A stretch of 64,000 nucleotides of DNA from Phyllobates terribilis (Eukaryota), in contig NW_027362767.1 of NCBI RefSeq assembly GCF_046119375.1, positions 41,788,001 through 41,852,000 of the forward strand. Reading direction: 5' to 3'. Positions 13,898-51,700 of this stretch are shown one piece after another; the first letter of the stretch is position 1, and every line of letters starts with the position of its first letter. The translations under genes were made by a program, and so were the position numbers. The notes beneath the pieces were generated by a model. It worked only from the letters and a program-made list of their open reading frames with translations, was not told the origin of the DNA and did not search any database.

Positions 13898-16800
13898 ATG
13901 GCCGACCCTGGATCAGGTGGCACGCTCCCACCCCTGGAACTGTATAACCGGGTGTCACAACAAGGGGAGAAAGTCCGAGTATTGAAAACAGAAAAGGCCA
14001 CAAAAGCAAGTATAGTGTGTCTATAAGTTCTGTATGTGTGTACTGCATCTGTCTATAGGTTCTGTATGTGTGTAATGTGTGTACTGCATCTGTCTATAGG
14101 TTCTGTATGTGTGTAATGTGTGTGCTGCATCTGTCTATAGGTTCTGTATGTGTGTAATGTGTGTACTGCATCTGTCTATAGGTTCTGTATGTGTGTAATG
14201 TGTGTGCCGCATCTGTCTATAGGTTCTGTATGTGTGTAATGTGTGTGCCGCATCTGTCTATAGGTTCTGTATGTGTGTAATGTGTGTACTGCATCTGTCT
14301 ATAGGTTCTGTATGTGTGTAATGTGTGTACTGCATCTGTCTATAGGTTCTGTATGTGTGTAATGTGTGTGCCGTATCTGTCTATAGGTTCTTTGTGTGTT
14401 TAATGTGTGTGCTGCATCTGTCTATAGGTTCTGTATGTGTGTAATGTGTGTGTACTGTATCTGTCTATAGGTTCTGTATGTGTGTAATGTGTGTGTACTG
14501 TATCTGTCTATAGGTTCTGTGTGTAATGTGTGTGTACTGTATCTGTCTATAGGTTCTGTATGTGTGTAATGTGTGTACTGCATCTGTCTATAGGTTCTGT
14601 ATGTGTGTAATGTGTGTGCCGCATCTGTCTATAGGTTCTGTATGTGTGTAATGTGTGTGCCGCATCTGTCTATAGGTTCTGTATGTGTGTAATGTGTGTA
14701 CTGCATCTGTCTATAGGTTCTGTATGTGTGTAATGTGTGTGCCGTATCGGTCTATAGGTTCTTTGTGTGTTTAATGTGTGTACTACACGTGTGAATATGT
14801 TGTGTGTGTGTGTGTGTGTATTATATGTATGGATAGGTTCTGTATATGTGTAATGTGTGTACTGAATCCCCCACAAATAATGAGAACGATAATAGATTTC
14901 CTAAAGGAGAAAAAACGTGGCGCTATCTAAGCGTAGTAAGATTTGATCAATTAAAAGGTTGAGTATCTATAGGAAATTGCTCACCTGACCCGCTTGTAGT
15001 ATGGATGAAATTGCAAAGGACTGCGGCCGACCTGGTGAGGTAGGATTGAATCCTGAGACAGGAGTATCCCACAGCGAGAATGCCAAAAGGAAGAACCAGG
15101 TGATGGCGCTATCTTTGCCACCAAGTGAGATCAAGGTGCAGGAACTTCAGGTCGCTCGTAAGTAAGAAAAAAAAAATAAAAATTTTATTATTCACACTAA
15201 TATAAAACGATAAAACCCTGAAGAAGGCTGCAAACTGCCGAAACGCATTGTGTGTATATAGGTTTTATTGTTTTATATTAGTGTGAATAATAAAAATATA
15301 TATATGTATATATATTTTTTTTTTTATTTACGAGCAACCTGAAGTTCCTGCACCTTGATCTCACTTGGTGGCAAAGATAGCGCCATCACCTGGTTCTTCC
15401 TTTTGGCATCCACAAATAATGAGAACAGGAGTCACATGCTATTGCTGATCCATTTTGAATATGGGACTGACGGAGATAGCAGTCAGTCTCATAGACATTG
15501 GAAAGACTATTTTTGTGATCGGATGCCCTAGGCGATCAGCTGCTTAGTATGTATCCTGTTTGATTAGGGACAACCATTTTAAAAGCAAAGTATATTAGAA
15601 ACTTTTTGACCTATTAAGAAAACCTCACTCATGGCAGAAGACTCCCCACAACCATGAGTGACTGATGGTTCATTCATTCGACTAGGTGTTATGTAATACC
15701 ACATCTCTCCTGCAGTGGCCACTAGTGGGTCTTAGAGAATGTAATAACCTCGAACAGTTTCATCATTGTGATCACTGTGACTATAAGATTTCCTCCTCAC
15801 TGGTGGTCGCCCCCATGCCTGCTCTCCTCCCCCTCTCTTGGAGGGGCTTATTAGATAACCTATGTTGTCTTCTTGCTGAAGGATGAAATTGATGCCGCGG
15901 TGAAGCTTCTTCTGGCTCTGAAAGTCAAATATAAGAATGCAACGGGAGAGGACTACAAGCCGGGGTCCCCACCCACCTGTGAGACCCCCTATGCCTACAA
16001 TGGGGTTACTGCTGCAAGTGACGAGAACGATTTTGTGGATCCCTGGACTGTGCAAACTGGCAGCGCAAAAGGGGTGGACTATGATAAACTTATAGGTAAC
16101 TGAGAGTGGATACACAATACTCATGTCATGTCCAGAATCTGTCCCTATTCTGCTCTGTTATTTGCCATCCATCCTTATTCAGTGGGTAGTTCCTGTTCAT
16201 CAGCATTCTGTCAGCACTATAGGTGCTGGAACTTCATAGCATGCATTGCTCCTGATATTGACCAGTGGTTCACCAGAGCTGAACTGAAAGCCGTCTCTGT
16301 GTATGATTCTGACAGGAGAGAAGGCGCCAAGAGACAAAGGCTAGATAAGTTACTGTAGATAGAAAGGAGCCACCTAGTGGTCGTCACTTTGGAGGTATTT
16401 TTTGGGGGTAATACAGTGATTTGCAGATTTCCTATTTAACACATTACCTATCAAATGAGGTCATGTTGTCTGAAAGTACGCAGACCATTTAATTTGGCAT
16501 CAGGATGAGCTGCCAGGTGCTGGACTATCAGATTCTGGATTATGAAATGATCATAGAAAATGTAGTTGGATGCCAGATCACAGGAATTTTGCCATAGACA
16601 TACAAGGAGACAGTTTTTTTCATGTGAGCTCTGCTTTCTCGGTACCTTACACCCTGTACTATATATTTATGATAAATTTCCTGCAGTTCGGTTTGGAAGC
16701 AGCAAAATCGACCAGGATCTGATTGATCGAATTGAACGAGTTACAGGGAACAAGGCGCACCACTTCTTACGGAGAGGAACCTTCTTTTCACACAGGTACG

Positions 16801-19800
16801 GGAACCACCATGTCATTAGGGGTCTGACCTCTGGGGTCCCCATTGATCTTGAGAATTGGGCTGCCTCGGTGCTTGAGGTTTTTCTGTACAGCGGCGTTTG
16901 CGGCAGAGATCTGCAGTCTGCCTCCTTCACCTGTAGGGGGCCGCTCTGCAATTCCTTGCACAGCGTGTTTGCAGGAGCGCTGCTCTGCAGGGAAACAACC
17001 CTGAAGGGAGTCCAGCACTACTCCTGCTCTTCTGCCCCTTCACTCTCAAGGAAATAAAAGTGATGGCAAATTCTAATCTCATATCATCCCTGCATAAGAT
17101 AGGAATACTTCATTGGCAGACTATAGGCTTCTGTAAGCGCCAGCCTGTATTCTGCTTACAGCTCTGAAGGAAAGGTGGCGTACATGTTATTGGCGCATTA
17201 TATCATAGAATGACTATTACAGATGACTCCACAACTAGGATTCACTTTAAACTTTATGTAGAGTTGTGCAACAGTTTAATAAAGCAACTTTGTGAAGTTT
17301 CTCATTTAAAAAAAAACAAAAACCCTGCAGCGTTTTGTGTATACAGCTCCGGTGCGGACCATTTGTCTCTACGGTTACAGACAAACCCTGTACTGTCTGA
17401 TCCTGTGTAGTCACGCTGGTACGCCGCCTCTTCCGGAAAGGGCGTAGTCAGAAACGCGTGACGAAAGGATCAGACTACATAGCGTTTGTTTGTAGTCTGT
17501 AACCATGGAGACACACAGGTCGGCACAGGAGTTCTGTACCTAAAACAGTTGGGGATTTTTAATAACGACTGGTTATAAAGTTTCTGAATTTATTATCTAT
17601 GGATTCACCTGGAGCAAAAAAAAAAAATCAAATGATTGCAAAAGTTTACAGACCCAGCAGATTTAGTACTAATTGCATATGTGATTATTTTTATACATCA
17701 GGGACATGCACCAGATTCTGGATTCCGTTGAGAAGAAGAAGCCTTTTTACCTCTACACGGGGAGAGGCCCGTCTTCAGATTCGATGCACGTCGGTCACCT
17801 CGTTCCATTCATCTTCACCAAGTAAGTAGCGGATCCTTGCTCATTAACCCTTTATGTGACAGCGGCGGCGATTTTATGCAGGCGCCAAGTTAACAGTTAA
17901 AACTCTGCAGGTGATGTTAAGCTATTGTTCTCTGTTTTCATCCAGTTCTTCATTGTGATAAGAACCCATCATTTTTATAACGGGGTTTAGTATCCCTTTA
18001 AGGGGAACCTGCATATGTTAGTTTTAGGGGTCTTATTTTGGGGGGGTACCGAGCTTCTTTTTTTCTCTATTTACAGGTGGTTACAGGAAGTCTTTAATGT
18101 CCCGCTGGTCGTCCAGATGACCGATGATGAGAAGTATCTGTGGAAGGACTTGACCTTAGAGAAAGCCTATCAGTACACTATAGAAAACGCCAAGGACATT
18201 ATTGCCTGCGGCTTCGATGTTAATAAAACCTTCATCTTCTCCGACCTGGAATATATGGGGTGAGTGAGTCCTTAGAATAAAAACATAAAGGGATATTAAC
18301 CCTACAACCTTATAATCAAGCAGTGACTGCATCCACCACTAGGGGGAACTAACTGCATACTGAATTATTTAGTTCAATGTAAATTCAGTATGCAGGAAGC
18401 TTCCCCTGGTGGTGGCTGCAAGCGGATAGATCTGTATTATTTAACCCCTTCTGAACATCCGCTGTACCCAAAGTTTATCCTCTCCATCGTTTTCTCCAAA
18501 GAGCAACAGAGTATGGGGAGAGGTGAAGGCGTCATGGAGGGTTACCCGACGGCTCGTGAAAACTTTTATAACATTCTATGTTCATGGATTCCACAGGATC
18601 AGTTCAGGTTTCTACAAAAATATTGTCCAAGTCCAGAAACACGTAACGTTCAACCAGGTTAAAGGGATATTCGGCTTCACAGACAGCGACTGCATTGGTA
18701 AGTAAAAATGTGAACACCCCAGATCTGACCTGTCTGCTGGGAGTAGTTGTCCTGACCTTGAGTGCCCGGTAATTTGTCTACCTGTCCTGTTGACCTTCAT
18801 TGTCCTATTGTTTTTCAGGGAAAATTAGTTTTCCAGCCATTCAGGCCGCTCCGTCGTTCAGCAGCTCCTTCCCAGAGATATTCAATGGCAGAAAGGATAT
18901 TCAGTGTCTCATCCCCTGTGCCATCGACCAGGTGGGGCGCTTGTTCCAAAATGGGGTAAAATGCTTAGGTCTTGGCCCACATGTGCGACCCTTATTTGCG
19001 TGCAGTGGTTTGTTCCTCTATATTGCAGCCAGAATTGTCTTTTGTGATGTGGAATGGCCTATTGCGTGCACATAATGGGGGGTGAATTCTGTGAAAAAGT
19101 ATATTTAAAAAAATAACTTTTCTGTTGCACTACAAACTATAATCAGTCTGCAAAAAAAAACAGCCTTAAAATACTGTCTTCTCCTTCAGGATCCATACTT
19201 CAGAATGACCAGAGATGTGGCGCCCAGGATCAACTACCTTAAACCAGCTCTGATGCATTCAACCTTCTTTCCTGCGTTGCAAGGGGCACAGACAAAGATG
19301 AGCGCCAGCGATGCCAATTCATCCATATTTCTCACAGACACCCCCAAGCAGATCAAGAATAAGGTGCTGCTCAGAGAATGGTGCAAAAGTCATGTTCAGT
19401 TAAAGGGGGTCGGCCATGTTGAAGCAAATATTACCAAATAGGATGTATTTACTAACGTAATCACTGCCCCATTACTGAGATTTCTGGAGCCATGTCCCCT
19501 TTATTGGCGATGTGACCAGACGTGTCCAAAGCCGTTGGTAAAATCCTCCAGTGCGTTCTGCTTTGTGTTCTCCATCATATATGGCATCCAACTGAACGGG
19601 GCACGGTATGACCCCATCCATGATTTGCAGAGAGCATGGAGGAGCCAGATTTCTGCCCAATTATATCATTAACCCCTTTTCCTCCCTTTTACAGATCAAT
19701 AAACATGCATTCTCCGGGGGCAAAGATACAATCGAGGAACACCGGAAATATGGTGGCAACTGTGAAGTCGACGTCTGTTATATGTACCTGACCTTCTTCC

Positions 19801-48700: not shown

Positions 48701-51700
48701 TAGTCCAGCACTTCCTCCCTCCTCTCCTGCTGGTGATGTCCGAGGTACGCGGTTCTGCATGCAGATCCCTGGGCACAGTGCTTAGAGCGCGCAAGCTCCC
48801 TCCTTGAAGGAGCCACACGCGCTGTCCTAAAGTGTCCCCAGCCAATGGCTGTGAGAAAATTACTATTTAAAGCACCTGCACCGGCATGGAGGTGCCTGTG
48901 CACAGTTGTTAGTCTGTTTCTTAAACATGCTTGCTAGTTCTCAGGTCCCAGTGCTTGTACCCCTGTATACCAGTCCTATATATCAGCCATGCCTCGCTGC
49001 CTGTCTGTATATTAGCAATTCCGGTCTGCACCAGCCTGCCTGTATATCAGCCGTGCCCATCTGCACCAGCCTGCCTGTATATCAGTCGTTCCCGCCTACC
49101 TATCAGCCGTGCCCACCTGCAGCTGCTGCCAGGATACCAGTCGTGCCCTGTAGTACCTGCCTACCTGTGTGTCTGTCATGCCAGTCACTAGACCAGCCGT
49201 GCCAGCCAGTACTTGCCAAGTCTGTCATTCCTGCCTCCTGTCCCTTGGGGGTCAGCTGCCATCCACCCGATGTCAGTCCTGGAGTAGCACCTGTCTCTGG
49301 CTCCCTAGTCTCTCCTCGGATCAAGGTATCGTCAGCCGCCGTGCATCCGAGGTCGTATTTGGTGAGGCACCTAGTCACGCCCCTCCAGGCTCTCCTCGGA
49401 TCACAGTGGTTCAACAACCCAGTCCGTTACACTCATCAGTAGTGTCCTCCACATGCCCCATTAATAGCGTCCTCCACATGCTCCATTAGTAGCGTCTTCC
49501 ACATGCCACATCAATAGTGTCATCCAAATGCCCTGTCAATAGTATCCTCCACATTAACATCAATAGTAAAACCTACAAAAGACAAAAATATATCTCATAC
49601 CCTACCATCATTATATATAAATGTAAAGCAAAGTTGCATAATAAATATAGGGTACTTAGTGAACTATTTTTGATCAAAAAAAGTTCACTAAGTACCCTAT
49701 ATTTATTATGCAACTTTGCTTTACATTTATATATAATGATGGTAGGGTATGAGATATATTTTTGTCTTTTGTAGGTTTTGCTTCTTTTTGCTAGTGTGAA
49801 CATGCTCCTATTTCTTGCATGTCTACCATCTTAGACCTCAGTTCACATTGCTTGGTTTATTAACATCAATAGTGTCCATCACATGCCCCATCAATAGTGT
49901 CCTCCACATGCCCCATCATTACATCTACTTTACTCTTTTGGTTGGTGAGCATGCATTCACCTTATTGCATGGTTACCCTAAACCATACATGTCAAACTCT
50001 GGACCATGGGCCAAATCTGGCCCGCAGGGTGGTTATATTTGGCCCGAGACACCAGAACCGCCACCCCAATGTGGGGCCATTATTCTGTATGGAGGACTAT
50101 ATGGGGCCCATTATACTGTATGGAGGACTATGTGGGCCCATTATTCTGTATGGAGCACTATGAGGGGCCATTATTCTGTATGGAGGACTATGTGGGGCCC
50201 ATTATACTGTATAGAGGACTATGTGGGGCCCATTATTCTGTATGGAGGACTATGTGGGGCCATTATACTGTATGGAGGACTATGTGGGGTCTATTATTAT
50301 GTATGGAGGATTATGTGGGGCCATTATACTATTTGGAGAACTATGTGGAGCCCATTATACTGTATACTTGTTGGCCCGTGACTTTGTCCAAGTTTTTCAT
50401 TTAGGCCCTCTGTGTGTTTGAGTTTGACATCCCTGCCCTAAACTATCAATGTTGATATGACTGGTTGCTGCTATGATCTGGTAATAATGTAGCGTGCACA
50501 GATGCCGAATACCGACGGACTCTAAAGTAGTCACATCCTCCTCACCACTCAAATCGCGCTATTGTTTATCACAGTTTTTAGAGTACAGACCAAAAGTTTG
50601 GACACACCTTCTCATTTAAAGATTTTTCTGTATTTTCATGACTATGAAAATTATACATTCACACTGAAGGCATCAAAACTATGAATTAACATATGTGGAA
50701 TTATATACTTAACAAAAAAGTGTGAAACAACTGAAAATATGTCTTATATTCTAGGTTCTTCAAAGTAGCCACCTTTTGCTTTGATGACTGCTTTGCACAC
50801 TCTTGGCATTCTCTTGATGAGCTTCAAGAGGTAGTCACCGGAAATGGTTTTCACTTCACAGGTGTGCCCTGTCAGGTTTAAGAAGTGGGATTTCTTGCCT
50901 TATAAATGGTGTTGGGACCATCAGGTGTGTTGTGCAGAAGTCTGGTGGATACACAACTGATAGTCCTACTGAATAGACTGTTAGAATTTGTATTATGGCA
51001 AGAAAAAAGCAGCTAAGTAAAGAAAAACTAGTGGCCATCAGTATTTTAAGAAATGAAGGTCAGTCAGTCCGAAAAATTGGGCAAACTTTGAAAGTGTCCC
51101 TAAGTGCAGTTGCAAAAACCATCAAGCGGTACAAAGAAACTGGCTCACATGAGGACCGCCCCAGGAAAGGAAGACCAAGAGTCACCTCTGCTCCTGAGGA
51201 TAAGTTTATCCGAGTCACCAACCTCAGAAATCGCAGGTTAACAGCAGCTCAGATTAGAGACCAGGTCAATGCCACACAGAGTTCTAGCAGCAGACACATC
51301 TCTTCAACAACTGTTAAGAGGAGACTTTGTGCAGCAGGCCTTCATGGTAAAATAGCTGCTAGGAAACCACTGCTAAGGACAGGCAACAAGCAGAAGAGAC
51401 TTGTTTGGGCTAAAGAACACAAGGAATGGACATTAGACCAGTGGAAATCTGTGCTTTGGTCTGATGAGTCCAAATTTGAGATCTTTGGTTCCAACCACCG
51501 TGTCTTTGTGCGACGCAGAAAAGGTGAACGGATGGACTCTACATGCCTGGTTCCCACCGTGAAGCATGGAGGAGGAGGTGTGATGGTGTGAGGGTGCTTT
51601 GCTGGTGACACTGTGGGGGTTTATTCAAAATTGAAGGCATACTGAACCAGCATGGCTACCACAGCATCTTGCAGCGGCATGCTATTCCATCCGGTTTGCG

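What the first reader, a model, noticed from the sequence alone, without database searches (positions are those of the whole stretch)
14871..15426. Hammerhead-like ribozyme at the apex of a 330-bp fold-back, inserted with a 17-bp TSD in WARS1
Seen: 522-bp insert between 17-bp direct repeats. 15080-15409 folds into a hairpin with ~135-bp arms whose only unpaired apex is CTGAAGA-A-GGC(TGCAAACT)GCC-GAAA-CGCA(TTG)TGTG-TA, the conserved hammerhead core. It lies on the WARS1 sense strand, in the same intron as the GC donor. Four extra TATA nt precede stem I. Known: Penelope-like elements and retrozymes carry type I hammerheads, PLEs leave inverted terminal copies, and long TSDs indicate target-primed insertion. 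Inference: a non-autonomous PLE/retrozyme-like family whose insert could self-cleave WARS1 pre-mRNA or form an ADAR substrate.
Basis: partly seen in the sequence, partly recalled or inferred. Interest (0 to 1): 0.75.

Follow-up and report, generated by a model that had tools for sequence, protein, structure and literature searches.

The report
Decayed Penelope-type hammerhead in frog retroelement
A 522-bp jumping-gene copy in an intron of a frog's tryptophanyl-tRNA synthetase gene carries, at the tip of a long hairpin, a worn-out copy of the small self-cutting "hammerhead" RNA typical of Penelope-like retroelements; this kind of element is already known to be abundant in frogs, and this copy is probably inactive.

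Summary
An exact 17-bp direct repeat flanks a 522-bp insert (14888-15409). Positions 15080-15409 fold into a 330-nt hairpin. Its apex carries CUGAAGA, GAAA and UH boxes on the WARS1 sense strand, inside the 1.88-kb intron between the first two coding exons.

Contigs from three DNA runs show the insert is a high-copy repeat: summed depth in the thousands, against about 5-13 in the flank. The 37-nt core (15217-15253) recurs in many other sequence contexts.

Most copies read G at 15247. That gives GAAA-CGCG-UU, a 1-bp helix III with a palindromic loop. There is also a bulged nucleotide between A9 and G10.1.

This copy has the loop mutated to CGCA and no helix I in the minimal register. In the register it actually folds into, 4-5 extra junction nucleotides remain. 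It is most likely catalytically dead.

Rfam found no hammerhead, but it also missed an intact example of this class, so that negative says little.

The fold-back fits the inverted partial copies made during target-primed retrotransposition.

This is a known kind; the scan has noted similar hammerhead/Penelope-like inserts elsewhere in this genome.

The parts
14871..14887 (.). Left copy of the 17-bp target-site duplication
   Evidence: Exact 17/17 match to 15410-15426. Two contigs from other family copies already align from 14879 or 14884 (table 8). Part of it may therefore also be microhomology with the element's end.
14888..15079 (.). Unique (non-palindromic) part of the insert, contiguous with the left arm in other copies
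   Evidence: High-copy: summed contig depth 2,600-10,000 against about 10 in the flank (table 2). Most other copies carry about 30 extra nt at 14988/14989 (tables 5c and 7). No tRNA-like head.
15080..15178 (.). Left outer arm of the fold-back, ending in an A-run
   Evidence: 99 nt, 96% complementary to 15311-15409. The outer 73 nt are identical between the arms. All 4 outer-arm mismatches lie at 15153-15175, and the single inner-arm mismatch is at 15209.
15183..15217 (.). Left inner arm (AT-rich). It acts as the long 'stem I' 5' strand in the fold this copy adopts.
   Evidence: 35 nt, 97% complementary to 15261-15295. MFE structure.
15218..15253 (+). Hammerhead core module: CUGAAGA, bulged A15225, helix II 15226-15228/15237-15239, GAAA 15240-15243, loop CGCA 15244-15247 (family majority CGCG), UU 15248-15249, GUGU 15250-15253
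   Evidence: Recurs in many other contexts. Contigs run on into unlike sequence before 15217 (13-19 contigs per run) and behind 15253 (16-18 per run) in all three DNA runs. A15247>G is the majority state (1384/1656 in X1, 1234/1751 in X6). The features match the PLE min-HHR description in PMC4209133. An independent example with the same layout is at L001:5940-5990.
15254..15260 (+). Specific to this subfamily.
   Evidence: Most core-bearing contigs diverge from this copy after 15253. Seven X1 contigs follow it to 15258 and then continue with a variant of the right inner arm (table 7).
15261..15295 (.). Right inner arm
   Evidence: A homologous sequence follows the core in some other copies (table 7).
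15296..15310 (.). (TA)n-like asymmetric bulge
   Evidence: Skipped as a repeat by the read tool.
15311..15409 (.). Right outer arm: an inverted partial copy of 15080-15178 that abuts the right TSD
   Evidence: The variant at 15378 mirrors the variant at 15111, both private to this copy relative to the family majority (table 3). The two arms therefore share one source.
15410..15426 (.). Right copy of the 17-bp target-site duplication
   Evidence: Contigs from two samples of two different studies span 15382-15900, so the junction is present in both (table 8: X1 record 8, X5 record 16).

Best explanation
The insert is one copy of an abundant, non-coding, non-autonomous retroelement family of this frog. 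It was inserted by target-primed reverse transcription into the first coding intron of WARS1, at the edge of a 41-bp minisatellite.

The motif at the hairpin tip is a genuine relative of the minimal type-I hammerhead carried by Penelope-like elements and their retrozyme derivatives. It has the CUGANGA box, one bulged nucleotide before helix II, a G10.1-C11.1 pair and GAAA. Helix III is 1 bp and closed by a palindromic CGCG loop that lets two copies pair. Then come UH and a short helix I.

In this copy the loop has mutated to CGCA. The flank that should form helix I does not pair. The RNA instead folds into a look-alike three-way junction with 4-5 surplus nucleotides next to the would-be cleavage site. 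It is therefore most likely a dead ribozyme.

The fold-back is the inverted partial copy that this type of retrotransposition often leaves, by a twin-priming-like or inverted-copy route. On this reading the element's RNA has the hammerhead near its 5' end. One cDNA was primed at the left target end on the RNA's 3' end. A second was primed internally from the right target end and ran to the RNA's 5' end. Whether that happened at this insertion or in its master copy cannot be told.

Shown: the repeat structure, the high copy number, the conservation of the core, the majority G at 15247, and the intron context. Inferred: mobilisation by Penelope-like elements, the twin-priming route, and inactivity.
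For: Structure and TSD.

High copy number: summed contig depth of 2,000-10,000 over 14866-15405, against 5-13 in the unique flank, in three DNA runs from two studies.

Core conserved in other contexts, with majority G at 15247 (tables 3 and 7).

Upstream consensus of the other copies ends ...AUACA before C15217 in all three runs. That would pair with GUGU 15250-15253 as helix I (table 7).

An independent contig, L001, has the same layout with helix I CAGC/GCUG directly after UU.

The helix III hexamer self-duplex is -7.5 kcal/mol with G at 15247 and -2.3 in this copy.

This copy passes only the loosest min-HHR descriptor.

The literature describes PLE insertions as 5'-truncated, with inverted partial copies, and for the newly described N-terminal-EN PLE clades (Naiad/Chlamys) a microsatellite insertion bias (PMC8557442).

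The insert abuts a 20-copy 41-mer minisatellite.

Other copies join the body, truncated at variable points (15080, 15116, 15130, 15152, 15165), to a fixed start at 15212-15217. Still other copies are fold-backs with different turning points (15110 or 15118 joined to 15362) (table 5).

Frogs are known to carry thousands of such motifs, and about 43% of Xenopus retrozyme copies are intronic (PMC4209133; bioRxiv 10.64898/2026.07.22.740005).
Against: No Rfam hammerhead model scores at E<=10, although the control shows this is uninformative.

No Penelope-like RT/GIY-YIG gene was linked to this family, and no other copy could be read in full. The family picture therefore rests on contig joints and loose-end consensus lines with only 0.5-0.6 agreement.

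Contigs break at repeats, so some boundaries may be assembly artefacts.

The adjacency of the left arm to the core recurs in at least two other contigs (joint 15165->15212; the X7 contig running on from 15208). That fits an inherited palindromic master at least as well as twin priming at this site.

The inverted piece lacks the element's 3' end, unlike the textbook Penelope arrangement.

Inactivity is inferred, not measured.
Confidence: 0.6

Rival explanations
1. The apex is an active hammerhead in the reader's register: helix III ACGCA/UGUGU, cleavage after A15256, and the long hairpin as helix I. It cuts WARS1 pre-mRNA co-transcriptionally.
For: This three-way junction is the minimum-free-energy fold of this copy (z = -3.3). 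All core boxes are present. A bulged nucleotide after A9 is tolerated in natural hammerheads (De la Pena & Flores 2001, as cited in PMC4209133).
Against: Four unpaired nucleotides separate the cleavage site from helix I, which no described hammerhead has. That stem III is not conserved: most copies diverge after 15253 and read G at 15247. There is no covariance-model hit. Even intact PLE-type hammerheads cleave poorly (PMC4209133), and 8 of 9 Xenopus retrozyme dimers did not cleave in vitro. The insert is present in samples from two studies within an essential gene, which suggests it is tolerated.
Confidence: 0.07
2. The fold-back is not a product of retrotransposition. Either two tail-to-tail copies of an A-tailed SINE-like repeat were later hit by a small inverted-repeat (MITE-like) element carrying the core, or the palindrome arose by DNA-level fold-back repair.
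For: The left arm ends in an A-run and the right arm begins with a T-run. The inner 113 bp (15183-15295) is a self-contained inverted repeat. The core occurs elsewhere without these arms.
Against: A single exact 17-bp duplication flanks the whole unit, and the right arm abuts it directly. The arms share private variants (15111/15378) and are identical over their outer 73 nt, so they are not two independent insertions. There is no short duplication around the inner repeat. 17 bp is too long for cut-and-paste transposons. Other copies of the family are fold-backs with different turning points, which points to a process tied to insertion.
Confidence: 0.12
3. The hammerhead resemblance is a coincidence in the loop of a palindromic insert.
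For: Descriptors loose enough to accept this copy are expected 0.035-0.037 times per 64-kb window. That means dozens across a scan of this size. No Rfam hit.
Against: The 37-nt module recurs in many unrelated contexts. Its majority state restores the palindromic loop. It shows three features not required by a plain box search (bulged nucleotide, G10.1-C11.1, palindromic loop) that are diagnostic for PLE min-HHRs. The motif starts exactly at the base of the stem.
Confidence: 0.04

Closest known systems
Minimal type-I hammerheads (min-HHR) of Penelope-like elements (Cervera & de la Pena 2014, PMC4209133)
   Same: CUGANGA box. One unpaired nucleotide between A9 and G10.1. G10.1-C11.1 pair. GAAA. 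A 1-bp helix III with a palindromic loop (CGCG in the family majority). UH. Thousands of dispersed, mostly solitary copies in frog genomes.
   Different: This copy has CGCA instead of the palindrome. Its helix I is 1 bp instead of 4-5 bp. Helix II is short (3 bp, then a U-U mismatch and one G-C). The core sits at the tip of a 134-bp-arm hairpin. No pLTR or RT/EN gene is linked to it here.
Non-LTR retrozymes of vertebrates (Cervera & de la Pena 2020; Li, Clavereau & Pollet 2026 preprint, 10.64898/2026.07.22.740005)
   Same: Non-coding element a few hundred nt long with a type-I hammerhead. Abundant in amphibians. Many monomeric copies, often intronic. Derived from PLE pLTRs.
   Different: Retrozymes are defined by tandem units, each with a ribozyme, and by circular RNAs. 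This locus is a single TSD-flanked unit with an inverted partial copy. No tandem of the whole unit was seen. One other contig has two cores about 74 nt apart.
Complex tandem/inverted insertions of Penelope-like elements (Craig et al. 2021, PMC8557442)
   Same: An inverted partial copy forming inverted repeats. 5' truncation. Insertion next to micro/minisatellite sequence.
   Different: In the textbook arrangement both copies keep their 3' ends outward. Here the inverted piece lacks the 3' end, as if primed internally. No direct pLTR and no 30-40-bp tail were recognised.
L1 twin priming (5' inversion)
   Same: TSD-flanked insert made of a 3' piece and an inverted, internally primed 5' piece. 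Overlap of the two pieces gives inverted repeats around a unique spacer.
   Different: No poly(A) next to the TSD. A hammerhead-bearing non-LINE family.
Intronic hammerheads HH9/HH10 of amniotes and Xenopus (De la Pena & Garcia-Robles 2010)
   Same: Type-I hammerhead on the sense strand of an intron.
   Different: Those are canonical, with tertiary loop contacts; they are conserved and detected by Rfam models. This one is not detected and has no loop-loop partners in a perfect 35-bp helix.

Membership tests
Hammerhead ribozyme, canonical type I (Rfam Hammerhead_1/HH9/HH10) | Conserved boxes CUGANGA, GAAA and UH in the right order around three helices | tested here: met
   15218-15224, 15240-15243, and 15255-15256 or 15248-15249
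Hammerhead ribozyme, canonical type I (Rfam Hammerhead_1/HH9/HH10) | Helix I starts directly after the cleavage site, with no surplus junction nucleotides | tested here: not met
In the other register helix I is 1 bp.
Hammerhead ribozyme, canonical type I (Rfam Hammerhead_1/HH9/HH10) | Score against the family covariance models | tested here: not met
   No hammerhead model at E<=10 in 2.5 kb or in 141 nt. The control, an intact min-HHR in L001, is also missed.
Hammerhead ribozyme, canonical type I (Rfam Hammerhead_1/HH9/HH10) | Self-cleavage giving 2',3'-cyclic phosphate and 5'-OH ends | not testable with these tools
   No confirmed RNA run. All runs are held as contigs, which cannot show RNA ends.
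PLE-type minimal hammerhead (min-HHR) | [quoted passage not shown] | tested here: met
   A15225; G15226-C15239. Criteria from PMC4209133.
PLE-type minimal hammerhead (min-HHR) | Helix III of 1-2 bp closed by a small palindromic loop that allows dimers | tested here: not met
   This copy has A-CGCA-U, self-duplex -2.3 kcal/mol. The family majority has G at 15247, giving A-CGCG-U at -7.5 kcal/mol. Met for the family, not for this copy.
PLE-type minimal hammerhead (min-HHR) | Helix I of about 4-5 bp flanking the core | tested here: not met
   Only C15217-G15250 can pair in this copy. Other copies have ...ACAC upstream, which would pair with GUGU (table 7; the consensus agreement is only about 0.5).
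PLE-type minimal hammerhead (min-HHR) | Many dispersed copies forming consensus families in one genome | tested here: met
   Hundreds of contigs 80-99% alike, with the core present in other contexts.
PLE-type minimal hammerhead (min-HHR) | Location in the pLTR of an element encoding RT and GIY-YIG endonuclease | not tested
No genome-wide search was possible.
Non-LTR retrozyme | Tandem units, each carrying a hammerhead | tested here: not met
   Single unit at this locus. No joint in the contigs goes back by a whole unit. One contig has two cores about 74 nt apart (table 5).
Non-LTR retrozyme | Circular RNA intermediates | not testable with these tools
   Contigs only; the single candidate RNA run (X7) is only guessed to be RNA.
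Penelope-like element insertion architecture | Target-site duplication of variable, often long, size and an inverted partial copy | tested here: met
   17-bp exact TSD; inverted copy 15311-15409. Description in PMC8557442.
Penelope-like element insertion architecture | Both copies keep the element's 3' end, giving inverted repeats that flank the whole unit; a direct pLTR is present | tested here: not met
   The termini 14888... and ...15409 are not inverted repeats of each other. The right piece ends at the equivalent of 15080.
L1-type twin priming | Poly(A) tail next to the 3' TSD | tested here: not met
   Neither end next to a TSD is A- or T-rich. The A/T runs are internal.

The most novel reading that the evidence does not exclude
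The hammerhead of this family works in vivo and defines the 5' end of the RNA that gets copied. In independent fold-back copies the inverted piece begins either at the start of the core (15217/15218) or at 15252/15253. The latter is 2-3 nt from the cleavage site predicted for the minimal register (15249|15250). Such junctions would be genomic footprints of ribozyme-cleaved RNAs used as retrotransposition templates. The core would then sit at the hairpin apex because it marks the RNA's 5' end.
Probability: 0.1. Interest if true: 0.6.

Novelty: new member of a known kind. Interest (0 to 1): 0.27.

Why it matters
Taken at face value, a self-cutting RNA on the sense strand of an essential housekeeping gene would be a striking regulatory device. 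The evidence says otherwise. This is one more decayed copy of the Penelope-type hammerhead repeats already known to litter frog genomes and introns.

Two modest points are worth keeping. First, Rfam covariance models miss this whole class, so negative model searches should not be used to dismiss such motifs, and box-only matches should not be read in the canonical register. Second, the pattern of junctions among copies suggests that this family often inserts as fold-backs with the ribozyme end at the apex. With a full genome, that pattern could inform the still unknown transposition mechanism of Penelope-like elements.

The 330-nt perfect hairpin in the WARS1 intron is a plausible double-stranded RNA source, but this was not tested.

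Tried and rejected
- **Rfam scans.** Scans of 2.5 kb and of 141 nt found no hammerhead. They returned only sub-threshold hits to plant and animal miRNA precursor models (for example 58 bits against a 200-bit cut-off). These merely reflect a long hairpin and were rejected.
- **Rfam control.** An intact min-HHR (L001) is also missed by Rfam.
- **tRNA-like SINE head.** None found.
- **Other copies in the window.** blastn with word size 7 found none.
- **Earlier scan notes by sequence.** Blank.
- **Earlier scan notes on a Penelope RT/GIY-YIG gene in this genome.** Blank.
- **Pattern scans of public collections.** One good example in a eukaryotic metagenome contig; the large ORF beside it is a C2H2 zinc-finger gene, not a Penelope RT. 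None in viral contigs. Three hits in GC-rich bacterial MAGs lack helix I and were rejected as chance.
- **Supplement of PMC4209133.** It holds the Xenopus consensus families but is not held as text.
- **Empty-site allele.** No contig joining 14887 to 15427 was listed. That is not proof of fixation.
- **Expression and editing.** The only candidate RNA run (X7) is merely guessed to be RNA. Its contigs over the insert come from other copies, so nothing can be said.
- **cDNA snap-back model with the core antisense.** Considered, and ranked below twin priming because it does not explain variable body ends joined to a fixed core start.
- **Exons.** WARS1 exons were examined one by one by reference.
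- **Operator limits.** No N run was touched. The read call used 1,071 letters.
Full report
**What is in the sequence**

An exact 17-nt direct repeat lies at 14871-14887 and 15410-15426 and flanks a 522-bp insert. The insert has two parts. The first is a unique stretch, 14888-15079. The second is a fold-back, 15080-15409. Its outer arms are 99 nt long and 96% complementary. Its inner AT-rich arms are 35 nt long and 97% complementary. A 43-nt apex (15218-15260) sits between them.

As RNA the fold-back has a minimum free energy of -226.8 kcal/mol, z = -29 against shuffles. From 5' to 3' it reads:
- CUGAAGA plus one A;
- a 3-bp stem GGC/GCC with an 8-nt loop;
- GAA;
- a 5-bp stem ACGCA/UGUGU with loop UUG;
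- AUAUA, leading into the long stem.

The hairpin is also interrupted by an AT-rich asymmetric bulge at 15296-15310. The apex is therefore not the only unpaired part.

**Gene context**

On the + strand I found open segments carrying the class-I synthetase signatures. These are an HVGH exon at 17685-17822 and a KMSAS exon at 19109-19438. Both match Pfam tRNA-synt_1b, the former below the curated cut-off because it is short. Further tryptophanyl-tRNA-synthetase-like exons lie at about 15883-16090, 16690-16795 and 18078-18260.

The first coding exon starts at ATG 13898 and ends at 14005, before GCAAGT, a GC donor. The next exon starts near 15883. It follows directly after a 41-bp minisatellite of about 20 copies at 14034-14868.

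**Is it a hammerhead by model search?**

No Rfam hammerhead family scored at E<=10, either in 2.5 kb or in 141 nt centred on the apex. The hits to miRNA precursor families are far below their cut-offs and only reflect a long hairpin.

This negative carries little weight, for the following reason. A public metagenome contig from a eukaryote (L001) holds a motif with the same layout and an intact 4-bp helix I. Rfam does not detect that one either.

My own descriptor searches gave these chance estimates:
- A relaxed canonical descriptor accepts this motif and is expected 0.035 times per window by chance.
- The loosest minimal-hammerhead descriptor accepts it at 0.037 per window.
- It fails the versions that require a palindromic loop or a helix I.

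On sequence alone the motif is only weakly significant.

**What the reads add**

All runs holding this stretch are kept as contigs. They come from one organism, coded, and earlier notes of this scan call it a frog. I laid four runs on 14830-15900 at 80% likeness or more. Summed contig depth was 2,000-10,000 over 14866-15405, against 5-13 in the unique flank. Hundreds of contigs were 80-99% alike. The insert is therefore a member of a high-copy family.

The right junction (15382-15900) is present in samples from two different studies. No empty-site contig was listed.

Three features stand out.

1. In all three DNA runs, 13-19 contigs match only from 15217 onward, and 16-18 match only up to 15253. 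Unrelated sequence lies beyond those points. The 37-nt core is thus a module that occurs in many other contexts.
2. The majority state at 15247 is G (1384 of 1656 in X1, 1234 of 1751 in X6). Most copies continue after 15253 with a T-rich sequence unlike this copy.
3. The upstream consensus of those other copies ends ...ATACA before C15217 in all three runs.

**Re-reading the motif**

With G at 15247 the conserved reading is GAAA, then the palindromic loop CGCG, then UU, then GUGU. Helix III is a single A-U pair closed by a palindromic tetraloop. The cleavage site would be 15249|15250. Helix I would be ...ACAC paired with GUGU.

Cervera and de la Pena (PMC4209133) describe exactly this for the minimal hammerheads of Penelope-like elements. 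Their list includes:
- a conserved G10.1-C11.1 pair;
- palindromic 15.2-16.2 positions or loop 3;
- a short helix I of 4-5 bp;
- presumed action as dimers, with low activity in vitro;
- about 9,000 such motifs in Xenopus tropicalis.

The "extra A" (15225) is therefore a family hallmark. L001 shows the same layout, with helix I CAGC/GCUG starting right after UU.

**State of this copy**

- The loop is CGCA. The hexamer self-duplex drops from -7.5 to -2.3 kcal/mol.
- Only one base pair of helix I can form in the minimal register.
- In the preferred fold, four unpaired nucleotides separate the would-be cleavage site from the long helix. I know of no natural hammerhead with this (my own knowledge).

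Intact motifs of this class also cleave poorly. Eight of nine Xenopus retrozyme dimers did not cleave in vitro. I conclude that this copy is most likely inactive. This is an inference.

**Origin of the fold-back**

The two arms are identical over their outer 73 nt. They differ at 5 positions, all near the apex (Fisher p = 0.018). They also share a state private to this copy (15111/15378). They therefore come from one source.

Other contigs of the family show three relevant patterns (table 5):
- The body is truncated at variable points (15080, 15116, 15130, 15152, 15165) and joined to a fixed start at 15212-15217.
- Some are fold-backs with other turning points (15110 or 15118 joined to 15362).
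- Some junctions begin at 15252/15253.

A twin-priming-like route fits best. On this model the element's RNA reads as the + strand from 15218 rightwards. The hammerhead is near its 5' end, and the RNA ends with the complement of 14888 onward. One cDNA is primed from the left target end on the RNA's 3' end and stops short of the core. A second is primed internally from the right target end and reaches the RNA's 5' end. The overlap of the two gives the arms, and the part copied once gives the apex.

Penelope-like elements are known for complex tandem/inverted insertions with inverted partial copies. A microsatellite insertion bias is reported for the newly described Naiad/Chlamys clades (PMC8557442).

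There is an alternative. The same adjacency of left arm and core recurs in at least two other contigs. This insert could therefore be a 5'-truncated copy of an already palindromic master. I cannot decide between the two.

A second long-TSD insert in this window (49571-49859) has the same plan of fold-back plus unique tail, without any hammerhead.

**Comparison with what is known, and novelty**

Hammerhead-bearing, non-autonomous Penelope derivatives are well described in amphibians. In Xenopus about 43% of retrozyme copies are intronic. This insert is a new member of a known kind.

It fails the tests for a canonical hammerhead. It fails two of the tests for a minimal one at the level of this copy, although the family passes them. 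It is not a retrozyme in the strict, tandem sense.

The scan has already noted several hammerhead/Penelope-like inserts, some of them fold-backs with 14-15-bp duplications, elsewhere in this genome.

**Limits**

- No full copy from elsewhere in the genome could be read.
- The family picture rests on contig joints and on consensus lines of modest agreement.
- No confirmed RNA data exist, so cleavage, editing and small-RNA production remain untested.

Noticed in passing
window 14034-14868: A 41-bp minisatellite of about 20 copies at 90% match fills the first 860 bp of the WARS1 intron, right up to the insertion site. It contains TG-rich tracts.
   Followed up: partly
window 14000-14012: The first coding exon of WARS1 (ATG 13898) appears to end before GCAAGT. 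That is a GC-AG intron; the acceptor lies near 15882.
   Followed up: partly
window 49556-49874: A second insert flanked by a 15-bp direct repeat (14/15 identical). It consists of a nearly spacer-less palindrome of about 212 bp plus a 77-bp unique tail. This is the same plan as the studied insert in mirror image, with no hammerhead boxes and no sequence similarity to it.
   Followed up: partly
window 15691-15723: A 33-nt stretch in the otherwise single-copy intron has summed contig depth of 1,400-3,700 against about 10 beside it. Contigs run on into partly conserved unlike sequence on both sides. It is a short fragment of another abundant repeat.
   Followed up: no
window 15153-15209 against 15269-15336: All five mismatches between the hairpin arms cluster in the inner 61 nt; four of the five are transitions. 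At three positions the left arm has G where the right arm implies A. This could be CpG decay, low-fidelity copying of the A/T-rich part, or editing of a hairpin RNA before copying. It remains unexplained.
   Followed up: partly
window 14988/14989: Most other copies of the family carry about 30 extra nucleotides here that this copy lacks (tables 5c and 7).
   Followed up: no
L001:5940-5990: A solitary, apparently intact Penelope-type minimal hammerhead lies about 370 bp downstream of a 700-aa C2H2 zinc-finger ORF, on a eukaryotic contig of a public metagenome. No Rfam model detects it.
   Followed up: partly
other loci of the same genome (contig in run X6, table 5): One contig carries two copies of the 37-40-nt core head to tail with 34 nt between them. 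That is a very short tandem of about 74 nt.
   Followed up: no
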